Shown here piece by piece: positions 12,698 to 57,517 of a stretch of 64,000 bases of DNA. Below the pieces are notes generated by a model. That model ran no database searches. It saw only the letters and a program-made list of their open reading frames with translations, and was not told the DNA's origin. Positions within the stretch are counted from its first letter, which is position 1. Each line of letters opens with the position of its first letter. The translations under genes and the position numbers were made by a program. The stretch lies in the IMG/VR virus record IMGVR_UViG_3300023235_000008, positions 166,060 to 230,059 of that record. One strand, written 5' to 3'.

Positions 12698-12725
12698 TTG
12701 ACAAACAAAATGATTGGTGTATAAT
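12698..12725 (+). promoter_or_regulatory. sigma70 promoter (leaderless transcript)
   Basis: TTGACA-16-TATAAT; ATG 7 nt downstream. Confidence 0.7.
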
Positions 12726-12731
12726 ACTCCT

Positions 12732-13445
12732 ATGATCAAGTTTACAGACATTCCAAATACAACGTTTAAAGGTTTCCGAGTATTCGGTGACGTGCATGGC
12801 GAGTTCGACGATATGGTTGAAATCGTTACAGGCGCACTTAACGAAGACTTGTTTCCGATTGGACTAGGCGACTTTACTGATCGTGGTCCAGAATCAGACA
12901 AAGTTATGGCTTATGTATTGATGATGGCACGTAACGGTTTGTTCGCCAGCATCATTGGTAACCACGACGACAAGTTGTGGCGGGCTTTGAACGGCAACAA
13001 TGTTAAAATCAACAACGGGTTGGAATTGACATTAGAGCAGTTGAACAACAACGATGACCGTGAAGGCATCGTTAATGAGTGGTTAACTGCAATGCCCAAT
13101 ATGCCATTGTTTGCTACATTTGACAAATATACTTTTGTTCACGGTTCATTTCATCCTGCGATGTTGACGGCTGACGAGTTGGCATACAAAGATAAAAAAG
13201 GATGGGGCAAAGTTGTTTCCCGTGCAATGTATGGTCAAGTTGATGGATTTCAAGAAAACGGTTACCCTAATCGTATCCACGATTGGGTTGATACTATTCC
13301 CGCTGGACATACAGTGTTCGTCGGTCACGAGGTTGTAGGCGATGTGCCAATAACCAAAACAGGTGCCTTGGGTGGCACGGCGCACTTCTTGGACACTGGT
13401 TCGGGCAAGGGCGGTTCAATCTCATTTATGGACGTGGAGTTTTAA
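12732..13445 (+). CDS. Calcineurin-like metallophosphoesterase (Pnkp phosphatase/PrpA/ApaH type)
   Basis: GDVHG, GDFTDRGP, GNHD, FVHG, VFVGH, LDTG motifs. Confidence 0.85.
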   Translation: MIKFTDIPNTTFKGFRVFGDVHGEFDDMVEIVTGALNEDLFPIGLGDFTDRGPESDKVMAYVLMMARNGLFASIIGNHDDKLWRALNGNNVKINNGLELTLEQLNNNDDREGIVNEWLTAMPNMPLFATFDKYTFVHGSFHPAMLTADELAYKDKKGWGKVVSRAMYGQVDGFQENGYPNRIHDWVDTIPAGHTVFVGHEVVGDVPITKTGALGGTAHFLDTGSGKGGSISFMDVEF

Positions 13446-13450
13446 AAACA

Positions 13451-13648
13451 ATGAAAGACAACTATAGCGGAGAACTTGCTTTCTTAGGATTGATTGCTTT
13501 CGCATTCGTAATCCTTGCAGTCGCTGGGTGGTTCACACACTTGTATGTGTGCTTTACCACGGCGGCTTGGGGCTTCCTTATCGCAGGGGCAATCTTCTTT
13601 CCAATCGGGGTATTCCACGGTTGGGGTAGTTGGTTCGGAATCTGGTAA
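13451..13648 (+). CDS. Small membrane protein
   Basis: Hydrophobic; conserved-looking GWFTHLYVCF...FFPIGVFHGW. Confidence 0.65.
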   Translation: MKDNYSGELAFLGLIAFAFVILAVAGWFTHLYVCFTTAAWGFLIAGAIFFPIGVFHGWGSWFGIW

Positions 13649-14052
13649 TGGCAATAATACATTTCTTTTTCGTATGGGGTATTCTATATGCCGCATCAAA
13701 CAACTACTACGACAATCCCGAGAACTACTATATGTATGTAGCAGTATTGGGTGCGTATGCTATCTCAATGATCGGCATATATATATGGCGTATCATTAAG
13801 CCGCAGGATATAACCGAAATCAAAGAAAAGTTGGTTACGATTACAATTGAGACAAATAATGATATGTTTATGCCCGAACTCTTTAAATGGATGACTACAT
13901 TTATTACTGTTCATCACGCTGCGGTTATAATGGCGACGGTGTATTTGTTGCCCGAACCAAACGTAATCCTTGCCATGTTGTTTATGGCGGCATATACACT
14001 TTGTGGTATTATTACCGACAAAACATTAGACCGTCTTTACCAAAAAGGATAA
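13648..14052 (+). CDS. Membrane protein
   Basis: Several hydrophobic helices; TAATG coupling. Confidence 0.6.
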   Translation: MAIIHFFFVWGILYAASNNYYDNPENYYMYVAVLGAYAISMIGIYIWRIIKPQDITEIKEKLVTITIETNNDMFMPELFKWMTTFITVHHAAVIMATVYLLPEPNVILAMLFMAAYTLCGIITDKTLDRLYQKG

Positions 14053-14061
14053 CCAATATAT

Positions 14062-14247
14062 ATGTTAATATCATCAGATTCCGACCAAACCCAAGAAACA
14101 TCAGAAAAACTCGAAGGTTATATTCTCGGATATATACAGCTTGGGTTTGGCGAAGATGCAGCTGCGCAGTGGCGAGTCAGTCGCATAACATTCTGTACTA
14201 ACGACGAGTTTGAAAAATATATGTTTTGGCAACAACTTTCTGCTTGA
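14062..14247 (+). CDS. Hypothetical protein
   Basis: ORF in operon. Confidence 0.5.
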   Translation: MLISSDSDQTQETSEKLEGYILGYIQLGFGEDAAAQWRVSRITFCTNDEFEKYMFWQQLSA

Positions 14248-14271
14248 CATTCATCTAACTTAGGGTATAAT
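14244..14271 (+). promoter_or_regulatory. sigma70 promoter (leaderless transcript)
   Basis: TTGACA-16-TATAAT; ATG 8 nt downstream. Confidence 0.7.
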
Positions 14272-14278
14272 ACTTATT

Positions 14279-15484
14279 ATGAAATATAACTTTCCACATA
14301 TCAATCACATCAATGATGTCCTTCCACATATCGAAGGTCGTAAAGAGTTCGTTGTGGCAGAACGAGATGGATTTACGGTTATCAACTATGTCGTAATGAC
14401 GCCTGACCTGTTCCCACCAGTTGTTACTGAAGCAGATGCAATACTGCGTGAATGTCGTGGCATCACTTTCTGCAATGAAACGGGCAAAGTCGTAGCTCGA
14501 AAGTTTCACAAGTTCTTTAACGTTGGCGAACGCATGGAAACCGAGTTCCGTAAACTGGATTTAAGTCAGCCACACGTTATTCTTGAAAAGCTTGATGGCT
14601 CAATGATTACGCCGTATCTGCGTGATGGTAAAGTTGAATGGCATACCAAAATGGGCAAGACTGATGTTGCCGATATGGTTATTCCTTTCGTTGAAGCAAA
14701 TCCACAGTATGCTGAACTGGCAGATTTCATATTGCGTAATAATAACGCTACGCCAATATTTGAGTTCTGTTCACGCAAGAATCGTGTTGTGATTGACCAT
14801 CCAGAAGACCGTATGGTATTACTGGCGGTGCGTGATAACGTAACTGGAAAGTATTGGGAATACGAGCTTGGTCTTGAAATCCCAGCTGTAGAATTTAATG
14901 TCGAGTTGGTCGGACAGCATAAAGCAACGTTTGACAAGGATTTCCTTGAATATGTTCGTGGCTTGGTCGGAACTGAAGGGTTCGTTGTGCGCTTTGATGA
15001 TGGGCATATGTTGAAAATCAAAGCAGAGGATTACTTACAGTTACATCGTGCCAAAGAAGGTATCTCTCATGAGAAGAATGTTTGGTCAATGGTCCTCAAT
15101 GAGTCAGTAGATGATTTGAAGTCATTCTTAGATGATGATGACCGTATGCGTGTTGAAGATTTTGAAGTGAAGTTATGGCGTGAAGTTGATTACGCTGTTC
15201 AGCACTTGGAAATGTTCTTCGGATTTGCAATGGATGATTTGAACAAGCGTGACCTATCAATGTTTGAAGATGCTGACCGTGAACGTAAGAAGATGTTTGC
15301 CATGGAATACGCTAATAACTACCGTAAAGAGTTCAAAGGTGTCTTGTTCAGCATGTTTGATGGTGGCGATGTGCGTGACTTGGTTATACAGTTCATTAAG
15401 AGCAACGTATCAACTGGAACTAAGTTGGATGGAATACGTCCGTTGTTTAACAACATTCAGTTTGATGAAAGGGAGTATGAATAA
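14279..15484 (+). CDS. rnl1: RNA ligase 1 (T4 Rnl1 family)
   Basis: ECRG, FHKFFNVGE, EKLDGS (motif I), TPIFE, EGFVV, LKIK. Confidence 0.9.
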   Translation: MKYNFPHINHINDVLPHIEGRKEFVVAERDGFTVINYVVMTPDLFPPVVTEADAILRECRGITFCNETGKVVARKFHKFFNVGERMETEFRKLDLSQPHVILEKLDGSMITPYLRDGKVEWHTKMGKTDVADMVIPFVEANPQYAELADFILRNNNATPIFEFCSRKNRVVIDHPEDRMVLLAVRDNVTGKYWEYELGLEIPAVEFNVELVGQHKATFDKDFLEYVRGLVGTEGFVVRFDDGHMLKIKAEDYLQLHRAKEGISHEKNVWSMVLNESVDDLKSFLDDDDRMRVEDFEVKLWREVDYAVQHLEMFFGFAMDDLNKRDLSMFEDADRERKKMFAMEYANNYRKEFKGVLFSMFDGGDVRDLVIQFIKSNVSTGTKLDGIRPLFNNIQFDEREYE

Positions 15485-15690
15485 TGGCAATACTAATATG
15501 TAATGATTGTCGCTTTCATTTTGAAGATAAATGGTCCACAAATCATAAGTGTTGTATTGAACCACAAACGACAGACAGGTTTCCTAGTATGACAGCGTGT
15601 CATAGGTTTGAACCAGAGTTTTGTTCAGACCCAGAACTGAAAAAACAATACGACAAGTTTATGTTTGGCATACACTTGCAAAAGGAGTAG
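15484..15690 (+). CDS. Cys-rich hypothetical protein
   Basis: CNDC...C..C. Confidence 0.55.
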   Translation: MAILICNDCRFHFEDKWSTNHKCCIEPQTTDRFPSMTACHRFEPEFCSDPELKKQYDKFMFGIHLQKE

Positions 15691-15696
15691 AGACAG

Positions 15697-15996
15697 ATGT
15701 TTAAAATAATAGAAAAAGCCGAATCATATGGAAAACGGCTAGATGAGAAGATAGAAGCAAATAAGTTAACTAGCGAAAGTCAATCCCATTTCTGTCTTTA
15801 CTATATCCTAAACCAGATTTCCTTTGAAATGTGTTTTAGCGTAGGAACGATGCTAGGATTCATATTCGCAGCGATTGTGCTAATCGGTTTGATTAGCTTC
15901 TTCCCATGGTTGCTTATCGTTATTGCGGTAGCACTAGGTTGGGCGATTAAACAACACTGTAATAAAAACTGGAAGAAACACAATGCCAAACAATGA
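15697..15996 (+). CDS. Membrane protein
   Basis: Hydrophobic C-terminal half. Confidence 0.55.
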   Translation: MFKIIEKAESYGKRLDEKIEANKLTSESQSHFCLYYILNQISFEMCFSVGTMLGFIFAAIVLIGLISFFPWLLIVIAVALGWAIKQHCNKNWKKHNAKQ

Positions 15997-16171
15997 AGAT
16001 CGAGTTCCTACTACTGCACCCTATGGCGGGATAACTGACGGAAGTGTCTACTGTACTCGATGTGGCGAAGAGAGAACAGGGTGCAGTATGTGTGCTGGTG
16101 AACTCAGGAGTTTGAAAGCAGGGCGATCAACCGCCTACAGATTTTGTATAGGAGATGAAAATGCTAAATAA
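15983..16171 (+). CDS. Zinc-finger-like small protein
   Basis: CTRC...CSMC. Confidence 0.5.
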   Translation: MPNNEDRVPTTAPYGGITDGSVYCTRCGEERTGCSMCAGELRSLKAGRSTAYRFCIGDENAK

Positions 16172-16595
16172 ATTGAAAGATGATGCGTTACAAGCGAGGA
16201 AAGATCGTGATCTTTTTGCTAGTTCACTCAACACGCTTTTGTCTGAAGTAAAGATGAGAGCAAAGAACGATGGCAACCGTGAGCCTAACGACGAAGATGT
16301 GTATAAGATAGCACAGACTACAATGGCTTCGTTGCTCGGTAATCGTGACCTATTGGACACTGCAGGACGTGACACGACTGAAGTAGAACAAGAGATGAAA
16401 GTGATTTCTGCTTACGTTCCTACTGTTATGCCGAAGGAAGAAGTCGAAGGTAAAGTTCAACTTGCTATGCATGAAATCAAACCAGAAGGCATGCAAGATA
16501 TGGGCAAAGTGATGTCATGGCTTAAAGAAAAGTATGGAGCTCGTATTGATATGAAACTGGCCTCTCAGCTTTTCCGGGAGCGATTGAATGGATAA
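16161..16595 (+). CDS. yqeY: YqeY/GatB C-terminal domain protein (tRNA-binding fold)
   Basis: LKDDALQARKDRD..LLSEVK..EPNDEDV..EMKVISAYVP..DMGKVM. Confidence 0.85.
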   Translation: MLNKLKDDALQARKDRDLFASSLNTLLSEVKMRAKNDGNREPNDEDVYKIAQTTMASLLGNRDLLDTAGRDTTEVEQEMKVISAYVPTVMPKEEVEGKVQLAMHEIKPEGMQDMGKVMSWLKEKYGARIDMKLASQLFRERLNG

Positions 16596-16857
16596 CATTG
16601 CCCAATCAGAGGATGAACTGATCGAAGACTTTGCTGGAATCATCGGCAAAATCATTGTCGCCCGAAAAGCATGTGATGATTATCTGGAATCTGGAACAGC
16701 ATCAACCTTCCGCGGTGATGTTGTGGTTGAAACCGACGCAAAGATTGCGGCACTATCACGTGAAGCCGATGTCATTATTGCAATGATTGATGATATTGCA
16801 GAAAACAAAGGCTTTGTGAACCGTATGAAAAAAATGTATAAGGAGTTAATGGAATGA
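16588..16857 (+). CDS. Hypothetical protein
   Basis: Coupled ORF. Confidence 0.6.
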   Translation: MDNIAQSEDELIEDFAGIIGKIIVARKACDDYLESGTASTFRGDVVVETDAKIAALSREADVIIAMIDDIAENKGFVNRMKKMYKELME

Positions 16858-17108
16858 CGAATGAAACGTGGAAAGAAGCTATTACCGACACATTAGGCGA
16901 TCTTGGCGATACAATCGTGTTGGCTACATTGGTTGAAGCTTACGTTGCAAATGAGCGTGACATTTACAATCTCGAAAGCAACGAAGAACTCGAAGATTAT
17001 CAAACAGAGGATTTAGAATATAATAAGAAGCTTCGTGAATCTGTAAAGTTTGTAATCAAATATTATTCAACAGATTCTGAACGTGTAAGATTGGGATTGG
17101 ATTTTTAA
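16854..17108 (+). CDS. Hypothetical protein
   Basis: ATGA overlap. Confidence 0.6.
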   Translation: MTNETWKEAITDTLGDLGDTIVLATLVEAYVANERDIYNLESNEELEDYQTEDLEYNKKLRESVKFVIKYYSTDSERVRLGLDF

Positions 17109-17567
17109 ATGCCTATGTTATATATGCTAATCGGTGTTCCAGCAAGCGGCAAGTCAACTTGGCTTGAACAAAATGCTGATAGTGGTGTAGTTTTAAGCAC
17201 GGACGCACATATTGACAATGTTGCCGCACAACAGGGCAAGTCATATAACGATGTGTTTGGCGATGCGATTAAAAAAGCCACTGTGAAAATGAATAACGAT
17301 TTAAAGCAAGCGGTTAATCGTGGCGAAGATATCCATTGGGATCAAACCAATCTTACGGTTAAATCTCGTCGTGGCAAGCTACAGAAGGTGCCTGATACGT
17401 ATGAAAAGATTGCGGTAGTATTTCCAACACCCGATGCCGACGAACATCAGCGGCGACTGGATTCACGCCCCGGCAAAACTATTCCACCACATATTTTGAA
17501 GAATATGATGGCAACTTTCCAAATGCCTACCACCGATGAAGGATTTGATAGGATAGTAGTAATATGA
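17109..17567 (+). CDS. Polynucleotide kinase-like P-loop protein (AAA_33)
   Basis: GVPASGKST, STD, WDQTN, RR, IP..I. Confidence 0.85.
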   Translation: MPMLYMLIGVPASGKSTWLEQNADSGVVLSTDAHIDNVAAQQGKSYNDVFGDAIKKATVKMNNDLKQAVNRGEDIHWDQTNLTVKSRRGKLQKVPDTYEKIAVVFPTPDADEHQRRLDSRPGKTIPPHILKNMMATFQMPTTDEGFDRIVVI

Positions 17568-19782: not shown

Positions 19783-19915
19783 GGATTGGTAGCTGAGAGG
19801 CACAGCGGCACCTTAATGGGTGTGTCGAAACATAAGCACGTAACAAACTCGCCGAGGACGCTCGAACGATAAGGTTACGCCTGTTACGTTGGTTCAAATC
19901 CAACCCAATCCACCA
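19783..19915 (+). tRNA. tRNA-Leu(TAA)-like RNA with ~60-nt extra arm
   Basis: GGATTGG/CCAATCC-A-CCA, intact D and T arms, irregular anticodon loop. Confidence 0.55.
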
Positions 19916-20937: not shown

Positions 20938-21554
20938 ATGAACACATGTAAAATATGCAATACACAGTTTATCAATAAACCTAAAACAACAGGTCTATAC
21001 TGTTCAATCTCCTGTGGAAATCGCAGTAGAGGAAATAAACTAAGAGAACAAAATAAGACAATCTATGTTCCGTCATCTTGCAAACGCTGCGGTGATGACA
21101 TTCCATATGAAAAAAGACGCAACACATTTTGCTCTAGTAAATGTGCTGCTACAGGAAATACAAACAGAAGGTATCTTCATACATCATATGCAAAGAATGC
21201 AACGAGGCATACAAACCAAGACATTCGGTTTCATACTTTTGTAGCAAGGCATGTGAGATTGAGAATAGGCGAGGGGCTACTGAAAAGAAAATTAAAAAAG
21301 GGGCAGTCAGAGGTCGCCCGACATTAAAAAGATATCTTCTACGAAAGAATGGACACTGCTGTGAAATGTGCAACGGGACGGAATGGATGGGCGAACCTAT
21401 TCCACTCGAACTTGACCATATTAATGGCGATGCGGGTAACAATATGCCCGACAACTTGCGATTATTATGCCCTAACTGCCATACTATAACACCATACTCA
21501 AATGGAAAAAATAGAGGCAATGGTAGAAAATCTCGTGGTGTCCCGCTAAACTAA
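20938..21554 (+). pseudogene. HNH endonuclease with zinc-finger N-terminus, split by a frameshift near 21165-21170
   Basis: ORF 20938 (CxxC/CSxxC) joins ORF 21141 (LELDHINGD..NLRLLCPNCH) if one base is restored. Confidence 0.75.
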
Positions 21555-23468: not shown

Positions 23469-23546
23469 GGATACGAGCCAACTATTGGTTTGTTGGGGCG
23501 GCCTTTTAACCCGTGTCTATTCTCGGTTCGATTCCGAGCGTATCCT
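23469..23546 (+). tRNA. trnK: tRNA-Lys(TTT), CCA not encoded
   Basis: GGATACG/CGTATCC; CT TTT AA. Confidence 0.8.
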
Positions 23547-23547
23547 C

Positions 23548-23627
23548 GTCTGTCAATATATAGTTACCTCCACGCGGTGACGGATGGAAAAGTTCGATAT
23601 AATATCGAACCTTACTAAATACTATAT
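23548..23627 (+). ncRNA. HDV-like (theta-type) self-cleaving ribozyme 3' of tRNA-Lys
   Basis: P1 GTCTGTC/GACGGAT (G1.U), P2 ATATAGT/ACTATAT, P3 ACC/GGT, L3 TCCACGC, P1.1 GG, P4 hairpin, J4/2 CTAA. Confidence 0.8.
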
Positions 23628-23631
23628 GAAA

Positions 23632-23703
23632 TACACAGTAGCTCAGAGGCAGAGCAGCAGATTGTTAATCCGTAGGTCGTGAGTTCGAGTCCCGCCGCCC
23701 CGT
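23632..23703 (+). pseudogene. tRNA-Asn(GTT) pseudogene (acceptor strands not complementary)
   Basis: D, anticodon and T arms canonical; TACACAG versus CGCCCCG. Confidence 0.6.
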
Positions 23704-26110: not shown

Positions 26111-26324
26111 ATACGATATCACCTTCATCAAGGATGGCGTATCCGATGCGAACAATAACGGTGAACGATTTGATTTGTTCACCGTTCAGTTTAATGGCAA
26201 GCCCATTATGCAACGTGTTCCACATCATTTCGCTGTTTGGGCAGTTGCCGCAATGCGTGAGTTCGATCCACGGGATAATCACGATGCCTATCGCAAAGTG
26301 CAATCAGAGTGTCCATATGATTAG
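26097..26324 (+). CDS. Hypothetical protein
   Basis: Coupled ORF MAAGKYDITF. Confidence 0.55.
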   Translation: MAAGKYDITFIKDGVSDANNNGERFDLFTVQFNGKPIMQRVPHHFAVWAVAAMREFDPRDNHDAYRKVQSECPYD

Positions 26325-27756: not shown

Positions 27757-27923
27757 GCGAGTGTGGTGAAATTGGTAAACACGCCAGATTTATGAGAGTC
27801 TCCGTTATAGGCTCCAATCTACAAGTTAGATTGTTTGGGGAACCGAGAAGGCTAAACCTTCAAAGTTCAAATCAGGTTCTGGTGCCGAAAGGTTTGGAGG
27901 TTCAAGTCCTCTCACTCGTACCA
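27757..27923 (+). tRNA. trnL: tRNA-Leu(TAG) with an 82-nt structured insert in the anticodon (27793-27874)
   Basis: Removing the insert restores CCAGA TT TAG GT TCTGG; the rest is a perfect Leu cloverleaf with A73-CCA. Confidence 0.85.
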
Positions 27924-29413: not shown

Positions 29414-29512
29414 GCCCCTATAGCTGAGTGGTTTAGCAAGGGTTTTGTCAAGTACATCCGAGGGTGTATTTGAAAAACCCTAGACCGGAGTTCGATTCTT
29501 CGTGGGGGCACC
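29414..29512 (+). tRNA. trnT: tRNA-Thr(TGT) with a 25-nt hairpin insert (29449-29473)
   Basis: AGGGT TT TGT [CAAGTACATC-CGAG-GGTGTATTTG-A] AA ACCCT; GCCCCTA/TGGGGGC-A-CCA. Confidence 0.85.
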
Positions 29513-29527
29513 ATTCCTAAAATATTA

Positions 29528-29596
29528 GGGGCTGCTGTATGGGACAGACTCTGCACTTGCACTGCGGATGGTGGGGATCGTTACCCCATAGCTCCA
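29528..29596 (+). tRNA. trnA: tRNA-Ala(TGC), CCA not encoded
   Basis: G3.U70 pair, A73, CT TGC AC. Confidence 0.8.
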
Positions 29597-29664
29597 GATT
29601 GATAATATTGACTACCTCCACGTGGTATCAATCGGAAACTACAGAAATGTAGGCTAAATGTCAA
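29597..29664 (+). ncRNA. HDV-like (theta-type) ribozyme starting right after the tRNA-Ala discriminator
   Basis: P1 GATTGAT/ATCAATC, P2 TTGAC/GTCAA, P3 ACC/GGT, L3 TCCACGT, GG, P4 CTACA-GAAA-TGTAG, J4/2 GCTAA. Confidence 0.85.
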
Positions 29665-29674
29665 AAAGAATAAA

Positions 29675-29830
29675 GGGTCTTTAGCTCAGTTGGTAGAGCA
29701 TCTCGCTTATGTGAGACTTCCTATAGTCTCCGGTCTATTGTTAGACCGTCATTGGTATACTGCGAAGGGAAATCTTCAAAGTTAATGAACATCGAGAATG
29801 TCGGCGGTTCAAACCCGTCAAGACCCACCA
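29675..29830 (+). tRNA. trnV: tRNA-Val(TAC) with an 80-nt structured insert in the anticodon (29710-29789)
   Basis: Removing the insert restores TCTCG CT TAC AT CGAGA; GGGTCTT/AAGACCC-A-CCA. Confidence 0.85.
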
Positions 29831-30044: not shown

Positions 30045-31175
30045 ATGATCATAGACGATGTGCCACGTGGATATACTGTCAACAATAAACTATTTTTCAA
30101 CCGCCATTTAGCTCACATTGAGCAAATGACGAATGGAGGGCTACTTGAGTTTAATATGTTTGATGACGCTTTCAGCAAATATAATTGGAAAATAGACCCT
30201 ACATTATCATTTGAGGAATTGATAGATATCCGAGCACACCAAATCAGAGAAACCAATGATGTGGTTGTGTTATGGTTTAGTGGTGGTACAGATAGTCTCA
30301 CGATGTATAATGCATTTATTCGCAACAATTTACACATTGATGAAATCATTGTTAGGTATTGGCCGATAGCTGGTCATTTTGGTATCGACAAATCAATTAT
30401 CGACTGGCTTTATGAACATCATCCTGACAAAAAAACTACTATAACGACGATTGACCAAACAGATAAGACTGTTCTATCATCCAATTTATACACAGATGAA
30501 TGGACATTATTGAATATGGGATTTGCTAAACATTTGAACGCTGCTGTAGTTTGGGGAACAGACGCCCTTAGTAAAAAATATGAAAACAGGAAATGGGTAC
30601 AAGTACATGGTTTCGAAAAACCACACTTGGTATACCGTAATGAAAAATTCTCTGCTTGGCATTTGGACCTTCCTTATCAATCAACTTTAGGTCACGAAAA
30701 TATGGAATACTTTTTCATAAGTCCTGAATTACCAGAACTACATATAAAGCAGTGCCATCTGCTAAAGAATCATTTAGTAGATAACCTATCGCATACATTA
30801 CATGAGGATTTTAGGTCAGAAAAACTATTTGAAACTACTGACCAGTCATCGTATATGAACTTATCAGTTCATGGGTGTGGCAGACACGGTGAAATACATC
30901 ATAAAATATGTGTTAGTGAGAAATCACTAATAAGGTCTAAAAAAGTTATATTTTCAAAGACAGAAAATTACAATGATTTGAAATTCACTGGATACCAATC
31001 TATACTTCACGCCAGCGCCAATAATATTGATAATATGAAGCATTGGTACAATGGCAGACTTGAGCTTATCAAATCCCCTGTGATGAAATATATGCTGGAT
31101 AGAAACCTAGTGACAAATAAAGACGACCCATTCAGTTTCGTCGGGATGTATTCCAAACAGTACGATCTAGAATGA
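30045..31175 (+). CDS. PP-loop (adenine nucleotide alpha-hydrolase-like) protein
   Basis: VVLWFSGGTDS; YFFISPELPELHIKQCH. Confidence 0.7.
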   Translation: MIIDDVPRGYTVNNKLFFNRHLAHIEQMTNGGLLEFNMFDDAFSKYNWKIDPTLSFEELIDIRAHQIRETNDVVVLWFSGGTDSLTMYNAFIRNNLHIDEIIVRYWPIAGHFGIDKSIIDWLYEHHPDKKTTITTIDQTDKTVLSSNLYTDEWTLLNMGFAKHLNAAVVWGTDALSKKYENRKWVQVHGFEKPHLVYRNEKFSAWHLDLPYQSTLGHENMEYFFISPELPELHIKQCHLLKNHLVDNLSHTLHEDFRSEKLFETTDQSSYMNLSVHGCGRHGEIHHKICVSEKSLIRSKKVIFSKTENYNDLKFTGYQSILHASANNIDNMKHWYNGRLELIKSPVMKYMLDRNLVTNKDDPFSFVGMYSKQYDLE

Positions 31176-31449: not shown

Positions 31450-31568
31450 GGGTGCGTGGTGGAATTGGTATACACGCCAGACTTTTCAGTAAGGCTTTCG
31501 GAAACGAGAGTTTTACAAAAAATCTGGTGCCTTATGGATTGCGGGTTCGAGTCCCGCCGCACCCACCA
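31450..31568 (+). tRNA. trnL: tRNA-Leu(TAA) with a 34-nt hairpin insert (about 31485-31518)
   Basis: CCAGA CT T[TTCA-GTAAGGCTTTCG-GAAA-CGAGAGTTTTAC-AA]AA AA TCTGG; perfect Leu body. Confidence 0.8.
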
Positions 31569-54574: not shown

Positions 54575-57517
54575 ATGAGTTGGCGTAAACACTTTAGAAC
54601 AGCAAATGCAAGCCCCCTTACTAATAATAGTCGGGGCAATGATTCATTTTCGCATAACAACTGGGCTTCCCAGTTACCAGAGGTTTATATTGGTCACCCA
54701 AATAGGGTCGAGCGATATGCCCAATATGAGAATATGGATAACGACAGTGAAGTAAACGCCGCACTGGATATTATCGCCGAGTTTTGTACACAAAAGAATG
54801 GTGATAACGGAACAGGGTTCGATATTCATTTTTATGAAGAAGCAACAGATTCTGAAATCAAGATTCTAAAAGAAGCCCTTATTAACTGGTGGAAAATTAA
54901 TAAATTCGAAACACGTTTGTTTAAAGCATTCCGTAATACTATTAAATATGGCGATCAAGTCTTTATCCGTGACCCCGATACACTAGAATGGTTCTGGGTT
55001 AATATGGAAGATGTCATTAAAGTAATCGTTAATGAAGGCGAAGGCAAAGCACCCGAGCAATACGTGGTTAGAAACATCAATCCAAACTTCGAAAGCTTAA
55101 CAGCAACGCAACGAACACACCAAGATCAAGTAGCTGGACAGACATCAAGCGGAACATCCGTTAATCAAAGCTACCAACAATCAAGTGCAGCAAATGGTAG
55201 CAGTGGTGGATCACGATTTGAAAATCAAATCAATGAATTCGCAGTCGATGCTGAACATATTGTTCATTGTTCACTAACCGAAGGCATGGATGTATCTTGG
55301 CCATTTGGTAATAGTATTTTGGAACGTATTTTCAAGGTATATAAACAAAAAGAACTACTAGAAGACGCACTTCTTATCTATCGTATCCAACGTGCACCTG
55401 AACGCCGAGTATTCAAAGTAGATGTTGGTAATATGCCATCACATATGGCTATGGCGTTTGTTGAGCGTGTGAAAAACGAAATTCACCAGAAGCGTCTGCC
55501 GTCACAAAGCGGTGGAAACAATATGATGGATGCTACATATAATCCACTATGTTTAGATTTGAGTACCAGAATTCCGTTATTGGATGGTAGGACGCTATCA
55601 CTTAATCATATTATTGATGAATTTAATGAAGGTAAGGAAAATTGGGTTTATTCTACTAATCCAGAAAATGGCGAAATAGTTCCCGGTCCAGTATCATGGG
55701 CTGGTATTACCAGAGAGAATGCGGAAGTAGTTAAATTAACTTTTGATAACGGCGAGACATTGACATGTACCCCCGATCATAAAATTCCAGTATTAGGAAA
55801 AGGATTTGTTAGTGCATCCGAACTAACTGCCGATGATAGTTTAATTTCACATAATACACAACAAACACCCATTACGACTGGAAAAAAACATAAAGATAAA
55901 ACATATACACAGGTGTTTGATCATAACAAGAAAAACTGGATTTATGTTCATAGAATGGTTGCTAATTTTATGAAGAATAAAACTCTTCATGAAGAGTTTA
56001 CATACTTGGACGAAAATATAAATTTATCTAAAAATACCATTCATCATAAGGATTATACAAGAAATAACAATAATCCAAGTAACTTATGCTTTATGAATAA
56101 AGAAGATCATATTAAGTTTCATAGTGAAAATAATTTCTGGAATGTTGTGTCAGATGCCGAGGCAGCACGTATCAAAAATAAGATATCTATTAAAACCAAA
56201 CGTAACTGGGATAATATGAATTCTATTGATAAAGCTGTGGCAGTTAATGATATGCGAACTATTCAACAGAAAGCAGTATGGATGCGCAAAAATGATCCTG
56301 AAACTAAGGCATCTTATGCCAAAAATATGTCTGCATCTCAAAAAATACGCATGAAAGAAAATCCAAAGGCATTAGCGCAATTACTCAAAAATGCTGAAAA
56401 TAGAGTTCCGTTTAATAATCAAGAGATGGTTTTAACACAGCAAATGTTAGGCAGAGTTGTTAGTATTATAGTAAAAAATAATACCACCACAAAAACTGAA
56501 GTTTTAAAGTTATGCGATGCTGATTCCATATTAATGAATATGTTTAGAGATGCTAATCCCAAAACAAAAAGATTATGTAAAATTGATTTTGACAAATGGG
56601 GATATAGTAAAATGGACAAACTTATAACCCAAGAAGGTTATAGTAATTGGAAAGATTTTACTAAAAAAGTTAGTCAATATAACCATAAAGTAGTGTCAAT
56701 TGAGTATTTGGAAGAGACAATGGATGTTGGCACGATTACAGTTGATGGACTAGAAGAATATCATAACTATCATACTTTTGCTATTGATGCCGGAATATAT
56801 GTTAAGAATTCAACAAATGAAGATTATTTCTTCCCCGTAACATCGGATGGTCGTGGTTCATCGGTTGATGTTCTACCGGGTGGACAAAATCTCGGTGAAA
56901 TTAATGATTTGCTTTACTTTAATAATAAATTATTGCGTGGATTACGTATACCGTCATCATATCTACCTACGGGACCAGACGAAGGTTCGCAAACATACAA
57001 TGATGGTCGTATGGGAACCGCATTGATTCAAGAAAAGACGTTCAATGACTACTGTATTCGTCTTCAAAATATGCTTGCACCATCATTTGACCAAGAGTTT
57101 AAGGTATTTTTACAAGAACGTGGATACAATATTGATAACTCAATCTTTGATTTACGTTTCAATGAACCACAAAACTTCTCAGCGTATCGTGAAGTAGAAG
57201 TAGATAGCAACCGTATCGGAACATTTACACAGCTTCTTGAAGTGCAGGGAATGTCATTGCGTTTCTTACAAAAGCGTTATCTTGGTCTTTCAGAAGAAGA
57301 AATGCAAGAAAATGACCGTATGTGGCGTGAAGAAAACGTCGAGTCTGAAGCAACACCTGTAACTGGCGACAGTATGCGTGGGCTTGGTATGAGTCCGGGT
57401 GGATTTAATGCTGATATGGACATTGCAGACCCTGATCAACCAGACTTTGGCGGTGATGAAATGGGCGAGATGGGTGGACCAGAAGGCGACGACATGGATG
57501 CTGACCTAGAATTGTAA
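54575..57517 (+). CDS. gp20: Portal protein with intein
   Basis: LLEDALLIYRIQRAPERRVFKVDVGNMP, EDYFFP, LPGGQNLGEI. Confidence 0.9.
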   Translation: MSWRKHFRTANASPLTNNSRGNDSFSHNNWASQLPEVYIGHPNRVERYAQYENMDNDSEVNAALDIIAEFCTQKNGDNGTGFDIHFYEEATDSEIKILKEALINWWKINKFETRLFKAFRNTIKYGDQVFIRDPDTLEWFWVNMEDVIKVIVNEGEGKAPEQYVVRNINPNFESLTATQRTHQDQVAGQTSSGTSVNQSYQQSSAANGSSGGSRFENQINEFAVDAEHIVHCSLTEGMDVSWPFGNSILERIFKVYKQKELLEDALLIYRIQRAPERRVFKVDVGNMPSHMAMAFVERVKNEIHQKRLPSQSGGNNMMDATYNPLCLDLSTRIPLLDGRTLSLNHIIDEFNEGKENWVYSTNPENGEIVPGPVSWAGITRENAEVVKLTFDNGETLTCTPDHKIPVLGKGFVSASELTADDSLISHNTQQTPITTGKKHKDKTYTQVFDHNKKNWIYVHRMVANFMKNKTLHEEFTYLDENINLSKNTIHHKDYTRNNNNPSNLCFMNKEDHIKFHSENNFWNVVSDAEAARIKNKISIKTKRNWDNMNSIDKAVAVNDMRTIQQKAVWMRKNDPETKASYAKNMSASQKIRMKENPKALAQLLKNAENRVPFNNQEMVLTQQMLGRVVSIIVKNNTTTKTEVLKLCDADSILMNMFRDANPKTKRLCKIDFDKWGYSKMDKLITQEGYSNWKDFTKKVSQYNHKVVSIEYLEETMDVGTITVDGLEEYHNYHTFAIDAGIYVKNSTNEDYFFPVTSDGRGSSVDVLPGGQNLGEINDLLYFNNKLLRGLRIPSSYLPTGPDEGSQTYNDGRMGTALIQEKTFNDYCIRLQNMLAPSFDQEFKVFLQERGYNIDNSIFDLRFNEPQNFSAYREVEVDSNRIGTFTQLLEVQGMSLRFLQKRYLGLSEEEMQENDRMWREENVESEATPVTGDSMRGLGMSPGGFNADMDIADPDQPDFGGDEMGEMGGPEGDDMDADLEL
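55550..56809 (+). mobile_element. Intein (420 aa) with HNH-type endonuclease
   Basis: C1 (CLDLSTRIPL), CTPDHK, HRMVA..IHHKD..NNPSNL, ends VKN|S. Confidence 0.85.

What the first reader, a model, noticed from the sequence alone, without database searches (positions are those of the whole stretch)
23548..23627. HDV-like theta ribozyme trimming tRNA-Lys(TTT)
Seen: complete nested double pseudoknot with a G1.U wobble, L3 TCCACGC and a candidate catalytic C; predicted cut after U73-C74. Known: theta ribozymes were described at tRNA 3' ends in gut phages, often with suppressor tRNAs and recoding, and cleavage leaves a 2',3'-cyclic phosphate. Here the phage uses the standard code, and its phosphoesterase is a candidate healer before CCA addition.
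Basis: partly seen in the sequence, partly recalled or inferred. Interest (0 to 1): 0.7.

Follow-up and report, generated by a model that had tools for sequence, protein, structure and literature searches.

The report
Self-cleaving ribozymes trimming two phage tRNAs
A large T4-like phage from a salt lake carries two HDV-like self-cleaving RNA motifs directly after its tRNA-Lys and tRNA-Ala genes, so they most likely cut these tRNAs free at their 3' ends; this kind of element was described in gut phages in 2024, and here it appears in a fuller form and in a new setting.

Summary
Window 23548-23628(+) folds into a complete HDV-like nested double pseudoknot (P1, P1.1, P2, P3, P4) with a G1.U wobble and L3 UCCACGC. 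The catalytic C is C23615, in a CUAA motif. G1 follows U73-C74 of tRNA-Lys(UUU).

P1, P2 and P4 differ between the copies by compensatory changes, while the catalytic core is identical.

A covariance model built only from other phages' ribozymes finds exactly these two sites in the 230-kb genome (E about 1e-7 and 2e-4). The core alone is expected 6e-4 times per genome by chance.

The conserved core matches published theta ribozymes letter for letter. Both copies carry a P4 hairpin (27 and 18 nt, against an L4 of 5-8 nt) and a 6-nt J4/2, so they fall outside the published minimal theta descriptor.

The host is a T4-like jumbo phage from a salt lake that uses the standard code. These two tRNAs are among the few in the array of about 28 without an encoded CCA.

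The phage encodes a CCA-adding enzyme and a split Pnkp-type kinase, 2',3'-phosphatase and Rnl1 ligase set. These enzymes also occur in relatives without ribozymes, so the healing link is plausible but not specific.

Verdict: real, a new member of a known kind, of moderate interest.

The parts
23469..23547 (+). tRNA-Lys(UUU), no encoded CCA. Acceptor 23469-75/23539-45, U73 = 23546, C74 = 23547. The predicted product ends ...U73-C74 with a 2',3'-cyclic phosphate.
   Evidence: ARAGORN. Below Rfam tRNA gathering; the best Rfam hit is tRNA-Sec at 25.4 bits. 3' flank comparison.
23548..23628 (+). HDV-like ribozyme copy 1 (the finding). P1 23548-54/23579-85; P2 23558-64/23621-27; P3 23566-68/23576-78; L3 23569-75; P1.1 C23570-71/G23586-87; P4 23589-99/23603-13; J4/2 23615-20.
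   Evidence: Sequence. Rfam drz-agam-1 28.9 bits, E 6e-4 local. Independent model R1 34.4 bits, E 1.7e-4 over the window, starting exactly at G1.
23615..23615 (+). Candidate catalytic cytosine (HDV C75 equivalent), first base of the conserved J4/2 CUAA.
   Evidence: Aligns with the CUAA block of published theta ribozymes, of model R1 and of copy 2 (C29654).
23638..23703 (+). tRNA-Asn(GUU)-like body 10 nt downstream of copy 1. The 5' acceptor strand does not pair and there is no CCA. Probably a damaged or unusual tRNA.
   Evidence: Rfam tRNA 39.6 bits, model positions 7-64 only. ARAGORN finds nothing. 83-89% identical to tRNA-Asn of other phages.
29528..29596 (+). tRNA-Ala(UGC) with G3.U70 and discriminator A73 = 29596, no encoded CCA. 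Atypical D arm and T loop.
   Evidence: ARAGORN (its boundaries are shifted by 3 nt). My register gives 7 clean acceptor pairs. No Rfam tRNA hit.
29597..29665 (+). HDV-like ribozyme copy 2. P1 29597-603/29627-33 (G1-C); P2 29608-12/29660-64; P3 29614-16/29624-26; L3 UCCACGU 29617-23; P1.1 C29618-19/G29634-35; P4 CUACA-GAAA-UGUAG 29639-52; catalytic C29654 in CUAAAU.
   Evidence: Core pattern hit. Rfam HDV-F-prausnitzii 41.5 bits, gathering 44, E 6e-5. R1 51.5 bits, E 1e-7.
12714..13445 (+). Metallophosphoesterase, 243 aa. Candidate 2',3'-cyclic phosphate/3'-phosphate healing enzyme (Pnkp phosphatase-like).
   Evidence: Pfam Metallophos. Best PDB match 4j6o_A, E 5.6e-17, which is the Pnkp 2',3' phosphatase (PMC3675462). 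Matches the middle part of PHROG 8238.
14279..15484 (+). T4 Rnl1-family RNA ligase, 401 aa. Context only: part of the RNA repair set.
   Evidence: Pfam RNA_lig_T4_1, E 4.5e-29. PHROG 562.
17109..17567 (+). P-loop polynucleotide-kinase-like protein, 152 aa. Context only: part of the RNA repair set.
   Evidence: Pfam AAA_33, E 3.8e-17. PHROG 505 polynucleotide kinase and the N-terminal part of PHROG 8238.

Best explanation
Both elements are active HDV-like (delta-like) self-cleaving ribozymes that form the 3' ends of two CCA-less phage tRNAs in cis.

Proposed mechanism:
1. The tRNA array is transcribed on the + strand.
2. As each ribozyme emerges it folds into the nested double pseudoknot.
3. 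The J4/2 cytosine (C23615 in copy 1, C29654 in copy 2) and a bound Mg2+ catalyse attack of the 2'-OH of the nucleotide 5' of G1.
4. This releases tRNA-Lys ending ...U73-C74>p and tRNA-Ala ending ...A73>p, each with a 2',3'-cyclic phosphate. The ribozyme keeps a 5'-OH and stays attached to the leader of the next tRNA.
5. The cyclic phosphate must then be removed. Candidates are the phage's Pnkp-type metallophosphoesterase or a host enzyme.
6. The phage or host CCA-adding enzyme then adds CA to tRNA-Lys or CCA to tRNA-Ala.

Shown here: the fold, the intact catalytic core, covariation, exact juxtaposition to the tRNA ends, the missing CCA, and the presence of the enzymes. Inferred: cleavage activity, the healing step, and which enzyme performs it.
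For: 1. All HDV-like helices and core residues are present in both copies.
2. The two copies share an identical core (ACC-UCCACGY-GGU, GG, CUAAAU). P1 differs at 6 of 7 pairs, with 4 double compensatory changes and 2 single changes, and all pairs are kept. P2 and P4 have unrelated sequences that still pair.
3. Model R1, built from six ribozymes of other phages, finds only these two sites in the whole genome. Both hits are full length and start at G1. The next hits have E of 2 or more.
4. In a 31-sequence alignment, P1 is 99.5% paired and all 7 pairs covary.
5. In IMG/VR, 112 of 116 hits to the core have P1 in register, and many abut tRNAs, including versions with P4.
6. Chance expectation is 6e-4 per genome.
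7. In the flank table of 27 tRNA-like genes, 22 are followed directly by CCA. The two ribozyme-linked tRNAs are not. This matches the report that 95.5% of theta-linked tRNAs lack CCA.
8. A CCA-adding enzyme and a Pnkp-like 2',3' phosphatase are encoded.
9. AAA and GCA, the codons read by these tRNAs, are the phage's commonest Lys and Ala codons.
10. Four theta ribozymes with the same core self-cleave in vitro, and C-to-U mutation kills them (Kienbeck 2024).
Against: - There is no experimental or transcript evidence. No RNA run was listed, and the DNA contigs show no variants.
- Rfam scores stay below gathering: 28.9 against 37 for copy 1 and 41.5 against 44 for copy 2.
- Four cultured relatives and five large IMG/VR relatives lack the core. 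The elements are therefore not conserved in the lineage.
- Both linked tRNAs are atypical and fall below the Rfam tRNA threshold. The tRNA-Asn-like gene next to copy 1 looks broken, so the cassette could be decaying.
- The phosphoesterase and the CCA enzyme are not specifically co-distributed with ribozymes.
- Copy 1 leaves one extra nucleotide (C74) beyond the discriminator.
Confidence: 0.82

Rival explanations
1. The ribozymes are active, but their selected role is not tRNA 3' maturation. They might instead act as processing insulators of a horizontally acquired tRNA cassette. In that role they would define the 5'-OH end of the downstream RNA (the tRNA-Asn-like gene or intron-bearing tRNA-Ile), or put a 2',3'-cyclic phosphate on the tRNA as a regulatory or protective end.
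For: - Both ribozymes lie 9-10 nt upstream of another tRNA-like gene.
- The two tRNA-ribozyme units differ from the rest of the array: no CCA and atypical tRNA bodies.
- They are absent from relatives, as expected for mobile cassettes.
- Many ribozymes with the same core in IMG/VR and in prokaryote genomes are not next to a tRNA.
Against: - G1 sits 0 or 1 nt after the discriminator in both copies.
- The same exact juxtaposition recurs in dozens of unrelated phages (Kienbeck 2024). This points to the upstream tRNA end as the selected target.
- Downstream tRNAs can get their 5' ends from RNase P without a ribozyme.
Confidence: 0.1
2. The elements are inactive relics of an imported tRNA-ribozyme cassette. 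The tRNAs are not used, and the motifs persist only because the insertion is recent.
For: - tRNA-Lys and tRNA-Ala score below the Rfam tRNA threshold.
- The adjacent tRNA-Asn-like gene lacks an acceptor stem.
- There are no orthologues in related phages.
Against: - Every catalytic-core residue is intact in both copies, while P1, P2 and P4 have diverged with pairing preserved. This is the signature of selection on the fold.
- tRNA-Lys(UUU) is the only Lys tRNA in the array and reads the commonest Lys codon.
- tRNA-Ala keeps the G3.U70 identity pair.
Confidence: 0.07
3. The resemblance to an HDV-like fold is due to chance in an AT-rich spacer.
For: The minimum-free-energy fold is only modestly better than shuffles (z = -1.9). 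Rfam scores are below gathering.
Against: - Core expectation is 6e-4 per genome, against 2 observed and 0 in 200 shuffles.
- P1 is 7/7 in register, with GG for P1.1, a CUAA motif and P2 all in place.
- An independent model gives E 1.7e-4 and 1e-7.
- Both hits lie at tRNA 3' ends.
Confidence: 0.01

Closest known systems
Theta ribozymes (minimal HDV-like ribozymes at phage tRNA 3' ends; Kienbeck et al., Nat Commun 2024, PMC10879173)
   Same: - The conserved core is identical: ACC | U | CC | ACGY | GGU | P1' | GG ... CUAA.
- G1 lies within 1 nt of a tRNA 3' end.
- The linked tRNAs lack encoded CCA.
- The host is a Caudoviricetes phage.
- The phage encodes a tRNA nucleotidyltransferase and an RNA ligase.
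   Different: - Ours have a P4 hairpin (27 and 18 nt) where theta ribozymes have a 5-8 nt L4.
- J4/2 is 6 nt (CUAAAU) with a U.U at the P2/P3 junction.
- The source is a salt lake rather than a gut, and the host is a T4-like jumbo phage.
- The phage uses the standard code and has no suppressor tRNA.
- The ligase is of the Rnl1 family, not the DRB0094 family.
drz-Fpra-1 / Rfam RF02682 (HDV ribozyme from Faecalibacterium prausnitzii)
   Same: Same overall fold with a short P4, and the same ...G-CUAA J4/2. Copy 2 scores 41.5 bits against this model.
   Different: The score is below gathering (44). As far as I recall, the F. prausnitzii ribozyme is not tRNA-linked.
Genomic HDV ribozyme and drz-Agam-1 (Rfam RF00094, RF01787)
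   Same: Nested double pseudoknot, G1.U wobble, L3 UCCUCGC against UCCACGC here, P1.1 CC/GG, and a catalytic C followed by NAA. The HDV layout is from my own knowledge; the drz-Agam-1 alignment is.
   Different: P4 is much shorter, the element is AT-rich, and the biological context differs (rolling-circle or retrotransposon RNA processing against tRNA 3' end formation).
RNase Z / exonuclease pathways for CCA-less tRNA 3' ends, followed by the CCA-adding enzyme
   Same: Same outcome: a tRNA cut at or next to the discriminator that then needs CCA addition.
   Different: Here the cut is made in cis by RNA. It leaves a 2',3'-cyclic phosphate rather than a 3'-OH, so an extra healing step is needed.

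Membership tests
HDV-like (delta-like) self-cleaving ribozymes | Nested double pseudoknot: P1 (7 bp), P1.1 (2 bp), P2 and P3 (3 bp), with optional P4, in the order P1-P2-P3-L3-P3'-P1'-P1.1-P4-J4/2-P2' | tested here: met
   All helices are present in both copies. P1 covaries in a 31-sequence alignment.
HDV-like (delta-like) self-cleaving ribozymes | Catalytic cytosine at the start of J4/2, followed by N-A-A | tested here: met
   C23615-U-A-A and C29654-U-A-A align with the CUAA block of published ribozymes.
HDV-like (delta-like) self-cleaving ribozymes | G at +1 forming G.U (or G-C) at the base of P1, and L3 U-C-C-N-C-G-Y supplying P1.1 and the metal site | tested here: met
   G23548.U23585 in copy 1 and G29597-C29633 in copy 2. 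L3 is UCCACGC and UCCACGU.
HDV-like (delta-like) self-cleaving ribozymes | Score at or above the gathering threshold of an Rfam HDV-like model | tested here: not met
   Copy 1: RF01787 28.9 against 37 and RF02682 21.3 against 44. Copy 2: RF02682 41.5 against 44. These Rfam models are narrow, built from mosquito and F. prausnitzii seeds. A model built from phage examples gives E 1.7e-4 and 1e-7.
HDV-like (delta-like) self-cleaving ribozymes | Mg2+-dependent self-scission 5' of G1, abolished by C-to-U in J4/2 | not testable with these tools
   No RNA run was listed. This needs an in vitro assay.
Theta ribozymes (Kienbeck 2024) | Minimal form: no P4 domain, short L4 | tested here: not met
   The paper defines theta ribozymes as minimal drzs lacking P4, found with a motif in which L4 was shortened. 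About 120 listed examples have L4 of 5-8 nt. Here there are 27 and 18 nt forming 10-bp and 5-bp hairpins.
Theta ribozymes (Kienbeck 2024) | Conserved nucleotides of the refined motif (ACC/GCC, U, CC, NCGY, GGU, GG, C-N-R-A) | tested here: met
   Identical blocks in both copies.
Theta ribozymes (Kienbeck 2024) | J1/2 of 1-3 nt, 7-nt P2 abutting P3, J4/2 of 4-5 nt | tested here: inconclusive
   The descriptor itself is a figure that is not held, so these limits are inferred from the lists. Ours fit only if a U.U mismatch at the P3-proximal end of P2 is allowed. Otherwise J4/2 is 6 nt (CUAAAU).
Theta ribozymes (Kienbeck 2024) | Cleavage site within +/-5 nt (77% within +/-1) of a tRNA 3' end, in a Caudoviricetes phage | tested here: met
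   Offset +1 (after C74) for tRNA-Lys and 0 (after A73) for tRNA-Ala. T4-like Gp23 and portal genes are present.
Theta ribozymes (Kienbeck 2024) | Typical setting (not strictly defining): mammalian gut phages of Bacteroidota or Bacillota, often with suppressor tRNAs and recoding | tested here: not met
   The source is salt lake metagenomes. The capsid protein is nearest to jumbo phages of Pseudomonas, Vibrio, Sinorhizobium and E. coli. The code is standard and there is no suppressor tRNA.

The most novel reading that the evidence does not exclude
The two units may be imported, CCA-less tRNA-ribozyme cassettes feeding a fully phage-encoded 3'-maturation line that needs no host RNase. The ribozyme would cut, the split Pnkp-type 2',3'-phosphatase would open and remove the cyclic phosphate, and the phage CCA-adding enzyme would finish the end. 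This would show that ribozyme-made tRNA ends are a general phage strategy outside the gut and independent of stop-codon recoding. It would also identify the missing healing step that the theta-ribozyme work did not address.
Probability: 0.2. Interest if true: 0.6.

Novelty: new member of a known kind. Interest (0 to 1): 0.4.

Why it matters
Ribozyme-made tRNA 3' ends were reported in 2024 and presented as a feature of gut phages linked to genetic-code switching. These two copies show the same catalytic core doing the same job in a different setting: a standard-code, T4-like jumbo phage from a salt lake.

The scans done here also show that P4-bearing versions next to tRNAs are common in public viral and metagenomic data. 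They fall outside the published minimal descriptor, so the published census is probably an undercount.

The genome also offers a concrete, testable candidate for a step the theta-ribozyme paper does not discuss, namely removal of the 2',3'-cyclic phosphate before CCA addition. The candidate is a Pnkp-type phosphatase encoded beside an Rnl1 ligase and a kinase.

Tried and rejected
- Near and distant BLAST of the region against 50,697 phage records matched only the tRNA-Asn-like part.
- An exact 22-mer of copy 1 and a copy-specific pattern found nothing in viral contigs.
- A protein-anchored search with the neighbouring ORF 30045-31175 found no relatives.
- Four cultured jumbo-phage relatives and five large IMG/VR relatives (74-78% capsid identity) have no core match above the control rate. 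Orthologue-based covariation was therefore impossible.
- MAFFT alignments of diverse P4-bearing ribozymes were misaligned in P1 and P4. I dropped them and built the model from one well-aligned subfamily instead.
- No RNA sequencing run was listed. Laying contigs from four salt-lake DNA runs showed no variants.
- The metagenome scan returned the same phage from a sister sample at 100% identity (L216), which is not independent evidence.
- C23611 was considered as the catalytic C and rejected. It sits opposite A23591 inside P4, whereas C23615 aligns with the conserved CUAA.
- ARAGORN's boundaries for tRNA-Ala (29525-29599) were rejected in favour of 29528-29596. That register gives seven clean acceptor pairs, G3.U70 and a 5-bp T stem.
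- The GGGGCGG (23495-23501) / CCGCCCC (23687-23693) complementarity was considered as a split tRNA-Asn acceptor. I judged it most likely chance (about 4% expectation within +/-300 nt).
- No DRB0094-family RNA ligase and no EndA-type splicing endonuclease is encoded.

Full report
**Observation.** The stretch 23548-23627 lies in a non-coding gap of a + strand tRNA array; no ORF of 50 aa or more overlaps it. ARAGORN places tRNA-Lys(UUU) at 23469-23547. Its acceptor stem is GGAUACG/CGUAUCC, the discriminator is U23546 and one further base is C23547.

From G23548 onward the sequence forms every element of an HDV-like ribozyme:
- P1: 23548-54 with 23579-85, 7 bp, with G1.U at the base.
- P3: ACC/GGU, enclosing L3 UCCACGC.
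- P1.1: C23570-71 with G23586-87.
- P4: 10 bp with one A.C mismatch, 23589-99 with 23603-13.
- J4/2: CUAAAU, 23615-20.
- P2: 7 bp, 23558-64 with 23621-27.

**A second copy.** A search for the core CCUCCNCGNGG found a second exact match at 29615-25. It belongs to a complete second ribozyme at 29597-29665:
- P1: GAUUGAU/AUCAAUC.
- L3: UCCACGU.
- P4: CUACA-GAAA-UGUAG.
- J4/2: G-C29654-UAAAU.
- P2: UUGAC/GUCAA.

Its G1 directly follows A73 of tRNA-Ala(UGC), which spans 29528-29596 and carries the G3.U70 identity pair. The two copies share the core letter for letter. P1 differs at six of seven pairs (four double changes and two single changes), and every pair is kept. P2 and P4 have unrelated sequences that still pair. 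This within-genome covariation was not imposed by the search, which used only the core.

**Statistics and independent models.**
- Rfam gives sub-threshold but full-length hits. Copy 1 scores 28.9 bits on drz-agam-1 (gathering 37; E 6e-4 in the local search). Copy 2 scores 41.5 bits on HDV-F-prausnitzii (gathering 44).
- I built covariance model R1 from six ribozymes of other IMG/VR phages. It finds only these two sites in the window and in the whole 230-kb genome: 51.5 bits (E about 1e-7) and 34.4 bits (E about 2e-4). Both hits are full length and begin exactly at G1. The next hits have E of 2 or more.
- In the 31-sequence model alignment, P1 is 99.5% paired and all seven pairs covary. That alignment is fitted to the model, so it leans towards the structure.
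- The core plus GG is expected 6e-4 times per genome. It is observed twice and never in 200 shuffles.

**What kind of ribozyme.** The supplementary lists of Kienbeck et al. 2024 show the theta layout: P1 | J1/2 | P2 | ACC | U | CC | NCGY | GGU | P1' | GG | L4 | CUAA(N) | P2'. Our copies have exactly these conserved blocks.

Theta ribozymes are defined as minimal drzs without P4, found with a descriptor in which L4 was shortened. In about 120 listed examples L4 is 5-8 nt and J4/2 is 4-5 nt. Here the L4 position holds 27 nt (copy 1) or 18 nt (copy 2) forming a hairpin, and J4/2 reads CUAAAU. The elements are therefore P4-bearing relatives of theta ribozymes, not members by the published descriptor.

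Such forms are not rare:
- A scan of IMG/VR for the core with a longer L4 gave 115 loci. Of 116 core hits, 112 have P1 in register.
- Several P4-bearing ones abut tRNAs: Ala, Gln, Ile, Trp, Lys and Met.
- Metagenome contigs add P4-bearing CUAAAU ribozymes after tRNA-Cys, tRNA-Glu and tRNA-Pro.
- In prokaryote genomes, 30 of 78 core hits have P1, and 7 of these abut tRNAs.

**Genome context.** The window is the last 64 kb of a 230,059-bp IMG/VR record that CheckV estimates to be 65% complete. It encodes a T4-type major capsid protein, a T4-type portal and Rad50/Mre11-like proteins. The capsid protein is about 65% identical to those of Pseudomonas phage PA5oct, Vibrio phage 2.275.O, Sinorhizobium phage Phosso and E. 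coli phage Turkey5.

The DNA is held by salt lake metagenome runs. ORF statistics and intact conserved genes fit the standard code, and no suppressor tRNA is found.

None of four cultured relatives or five large IMG/VR relatives carries the core above the control rate. The ribozymes are therefore not a lineage trait.

In the flank table of 27 tRNA-like genes, 22 are followed directly by CCA; an intron-aware run adds one more gene that also ends in CCA. tRNA-Lys and tRNA-Ala are not followed by CCA. They are also the ones that fail the Rfam tRNA threshold. Together this suggests imported tRNA-ribozyme cassettes. AAA and GCA, the codons they read, are the commonest Lys and Ala codons of the phage.

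**Mechanism.** By analogy with HDV-like ribozymes in general, and with the four theta ribozymes shown to cleave in vitro, the J4/2 cytosine and Mg2+ catalyse cleavage 5' of G1. This would release tRNA-Lys-U73-C74>p and tRNA-Ala-A73>p. A 2',3'-cyclic phosphate blocks nucleotide addition, so a healing step is needed before CCA addition. That is established chemistry; the word 'cyclic' does not occur in the main text of the theta paper.

The phage encodes:
- A tRNA nucleotidyltransferase, at genome 50077-51405, outside the window.
- A 243-aa metallophosphoesterase (12714-13445). [quoted passage not shown]
- An Rnl1-type ligase (14279-15484).
- A polynucleotide-kinase-like protein (17109-17567).

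The last three proteins match three successive parts of one 737-aa PHROG family. Together they form a split Pnkp-like heal-and-seal set.

The phosphoesterase is also present in ribozyme-less PA5oct and Phosso and absent from three complete ribozyme-bearing phages. The CCA enzyme is similarly scattered.

**Limits.** No transcript data exist for this phage in the runs that could be listed. The only other DNA copy is the same phage. Activity and the downstream steps are inferred.

**Verdict.** This is a genuine pair of HDV-like ribozymes at tRNA 3' ends. It is a new member of a known kind, with a P4 stem, a non-gut source and a standard-code host as the points of difference.

Noticed in passing
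window 19783-19915, 27757-27923, 29414-29513, 29675-29830, 31450-31568: Five tRNAs of the array carry structured insertions of about 24-82 nt in the anticodon loop. Examples are tRNA-Asp(GUC) with 24 nt after position 37/38 and two tRNA-Ile(UAU) with 80-82 nt. The two Ile insertions are homologous and fold strongly (-54.4 kcal/mol, z = -4.25). A homologous insertion sits in a tRNA of another IMG/VR phage (L292). They are too short for group I introns. No Rfam ribozyme matches them, and no EndA-type endonuclease is encoded. The split Pnkp/Rnl1 set could heal and seal such tRNAs if something cuts them..
   Followed up: partly
window 23638-23703: A tRNA-Asn(GUU)-like body lies 10 nt after ribozyme copy 1. 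It is 83-89% identical to tRNA-Asn of other phages from position 7 to the T arm. Its 5' acceptor strand does not pair with the 3' strand CGCCCCG, and no CCA follows. It may be a pseudogene damaged when the tRNA-Lys-ribozyme unit was inserted..
   Followed up: partly
window 12714-17567: A split Pnkp-like RNA repair set lies just upstream of the tRNA array: a metallophosphoesterase (12714-13445), an Rnl1-type ligase (14279-15484) and a kinase (17109-17567). They are separate genes that match successive parts of one 737-aa PHROG family..
   Followed up: partly
window 54575-57517: The T4-like portal gene (980 aa) contains an intein-splicing domain between its two portal halves.
   Followed up: no
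L035:1902-1996, L049:7300-7394, L016:8789-8883: In three IMG/VR phage contigs, the ribozyme subfamily closest to copy 2 follows a sequence that looks like the 3' end of a tmRNA (...GGGUUCGACUCCCUCUACCUCCA|G) rather than a tRNA. HDV-like ribozymes may therefore also trim phage tmRNAs. ARAGORN found no tRNA there.
   Followed up: no
window 26122-26293: A sister-sample contig of the same phage (L216) is 100% identical across the tRNA array except for a gap of about 170 bp at this position. This is an indel polymorphism within the array.
   Followed up: no
window 21141-21554: An HNH endonuclease gene (137 aa) sits inside the tRNA array. It may be a homing or mobile-element gene relevant to turnover of the array.
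   Followed up: no
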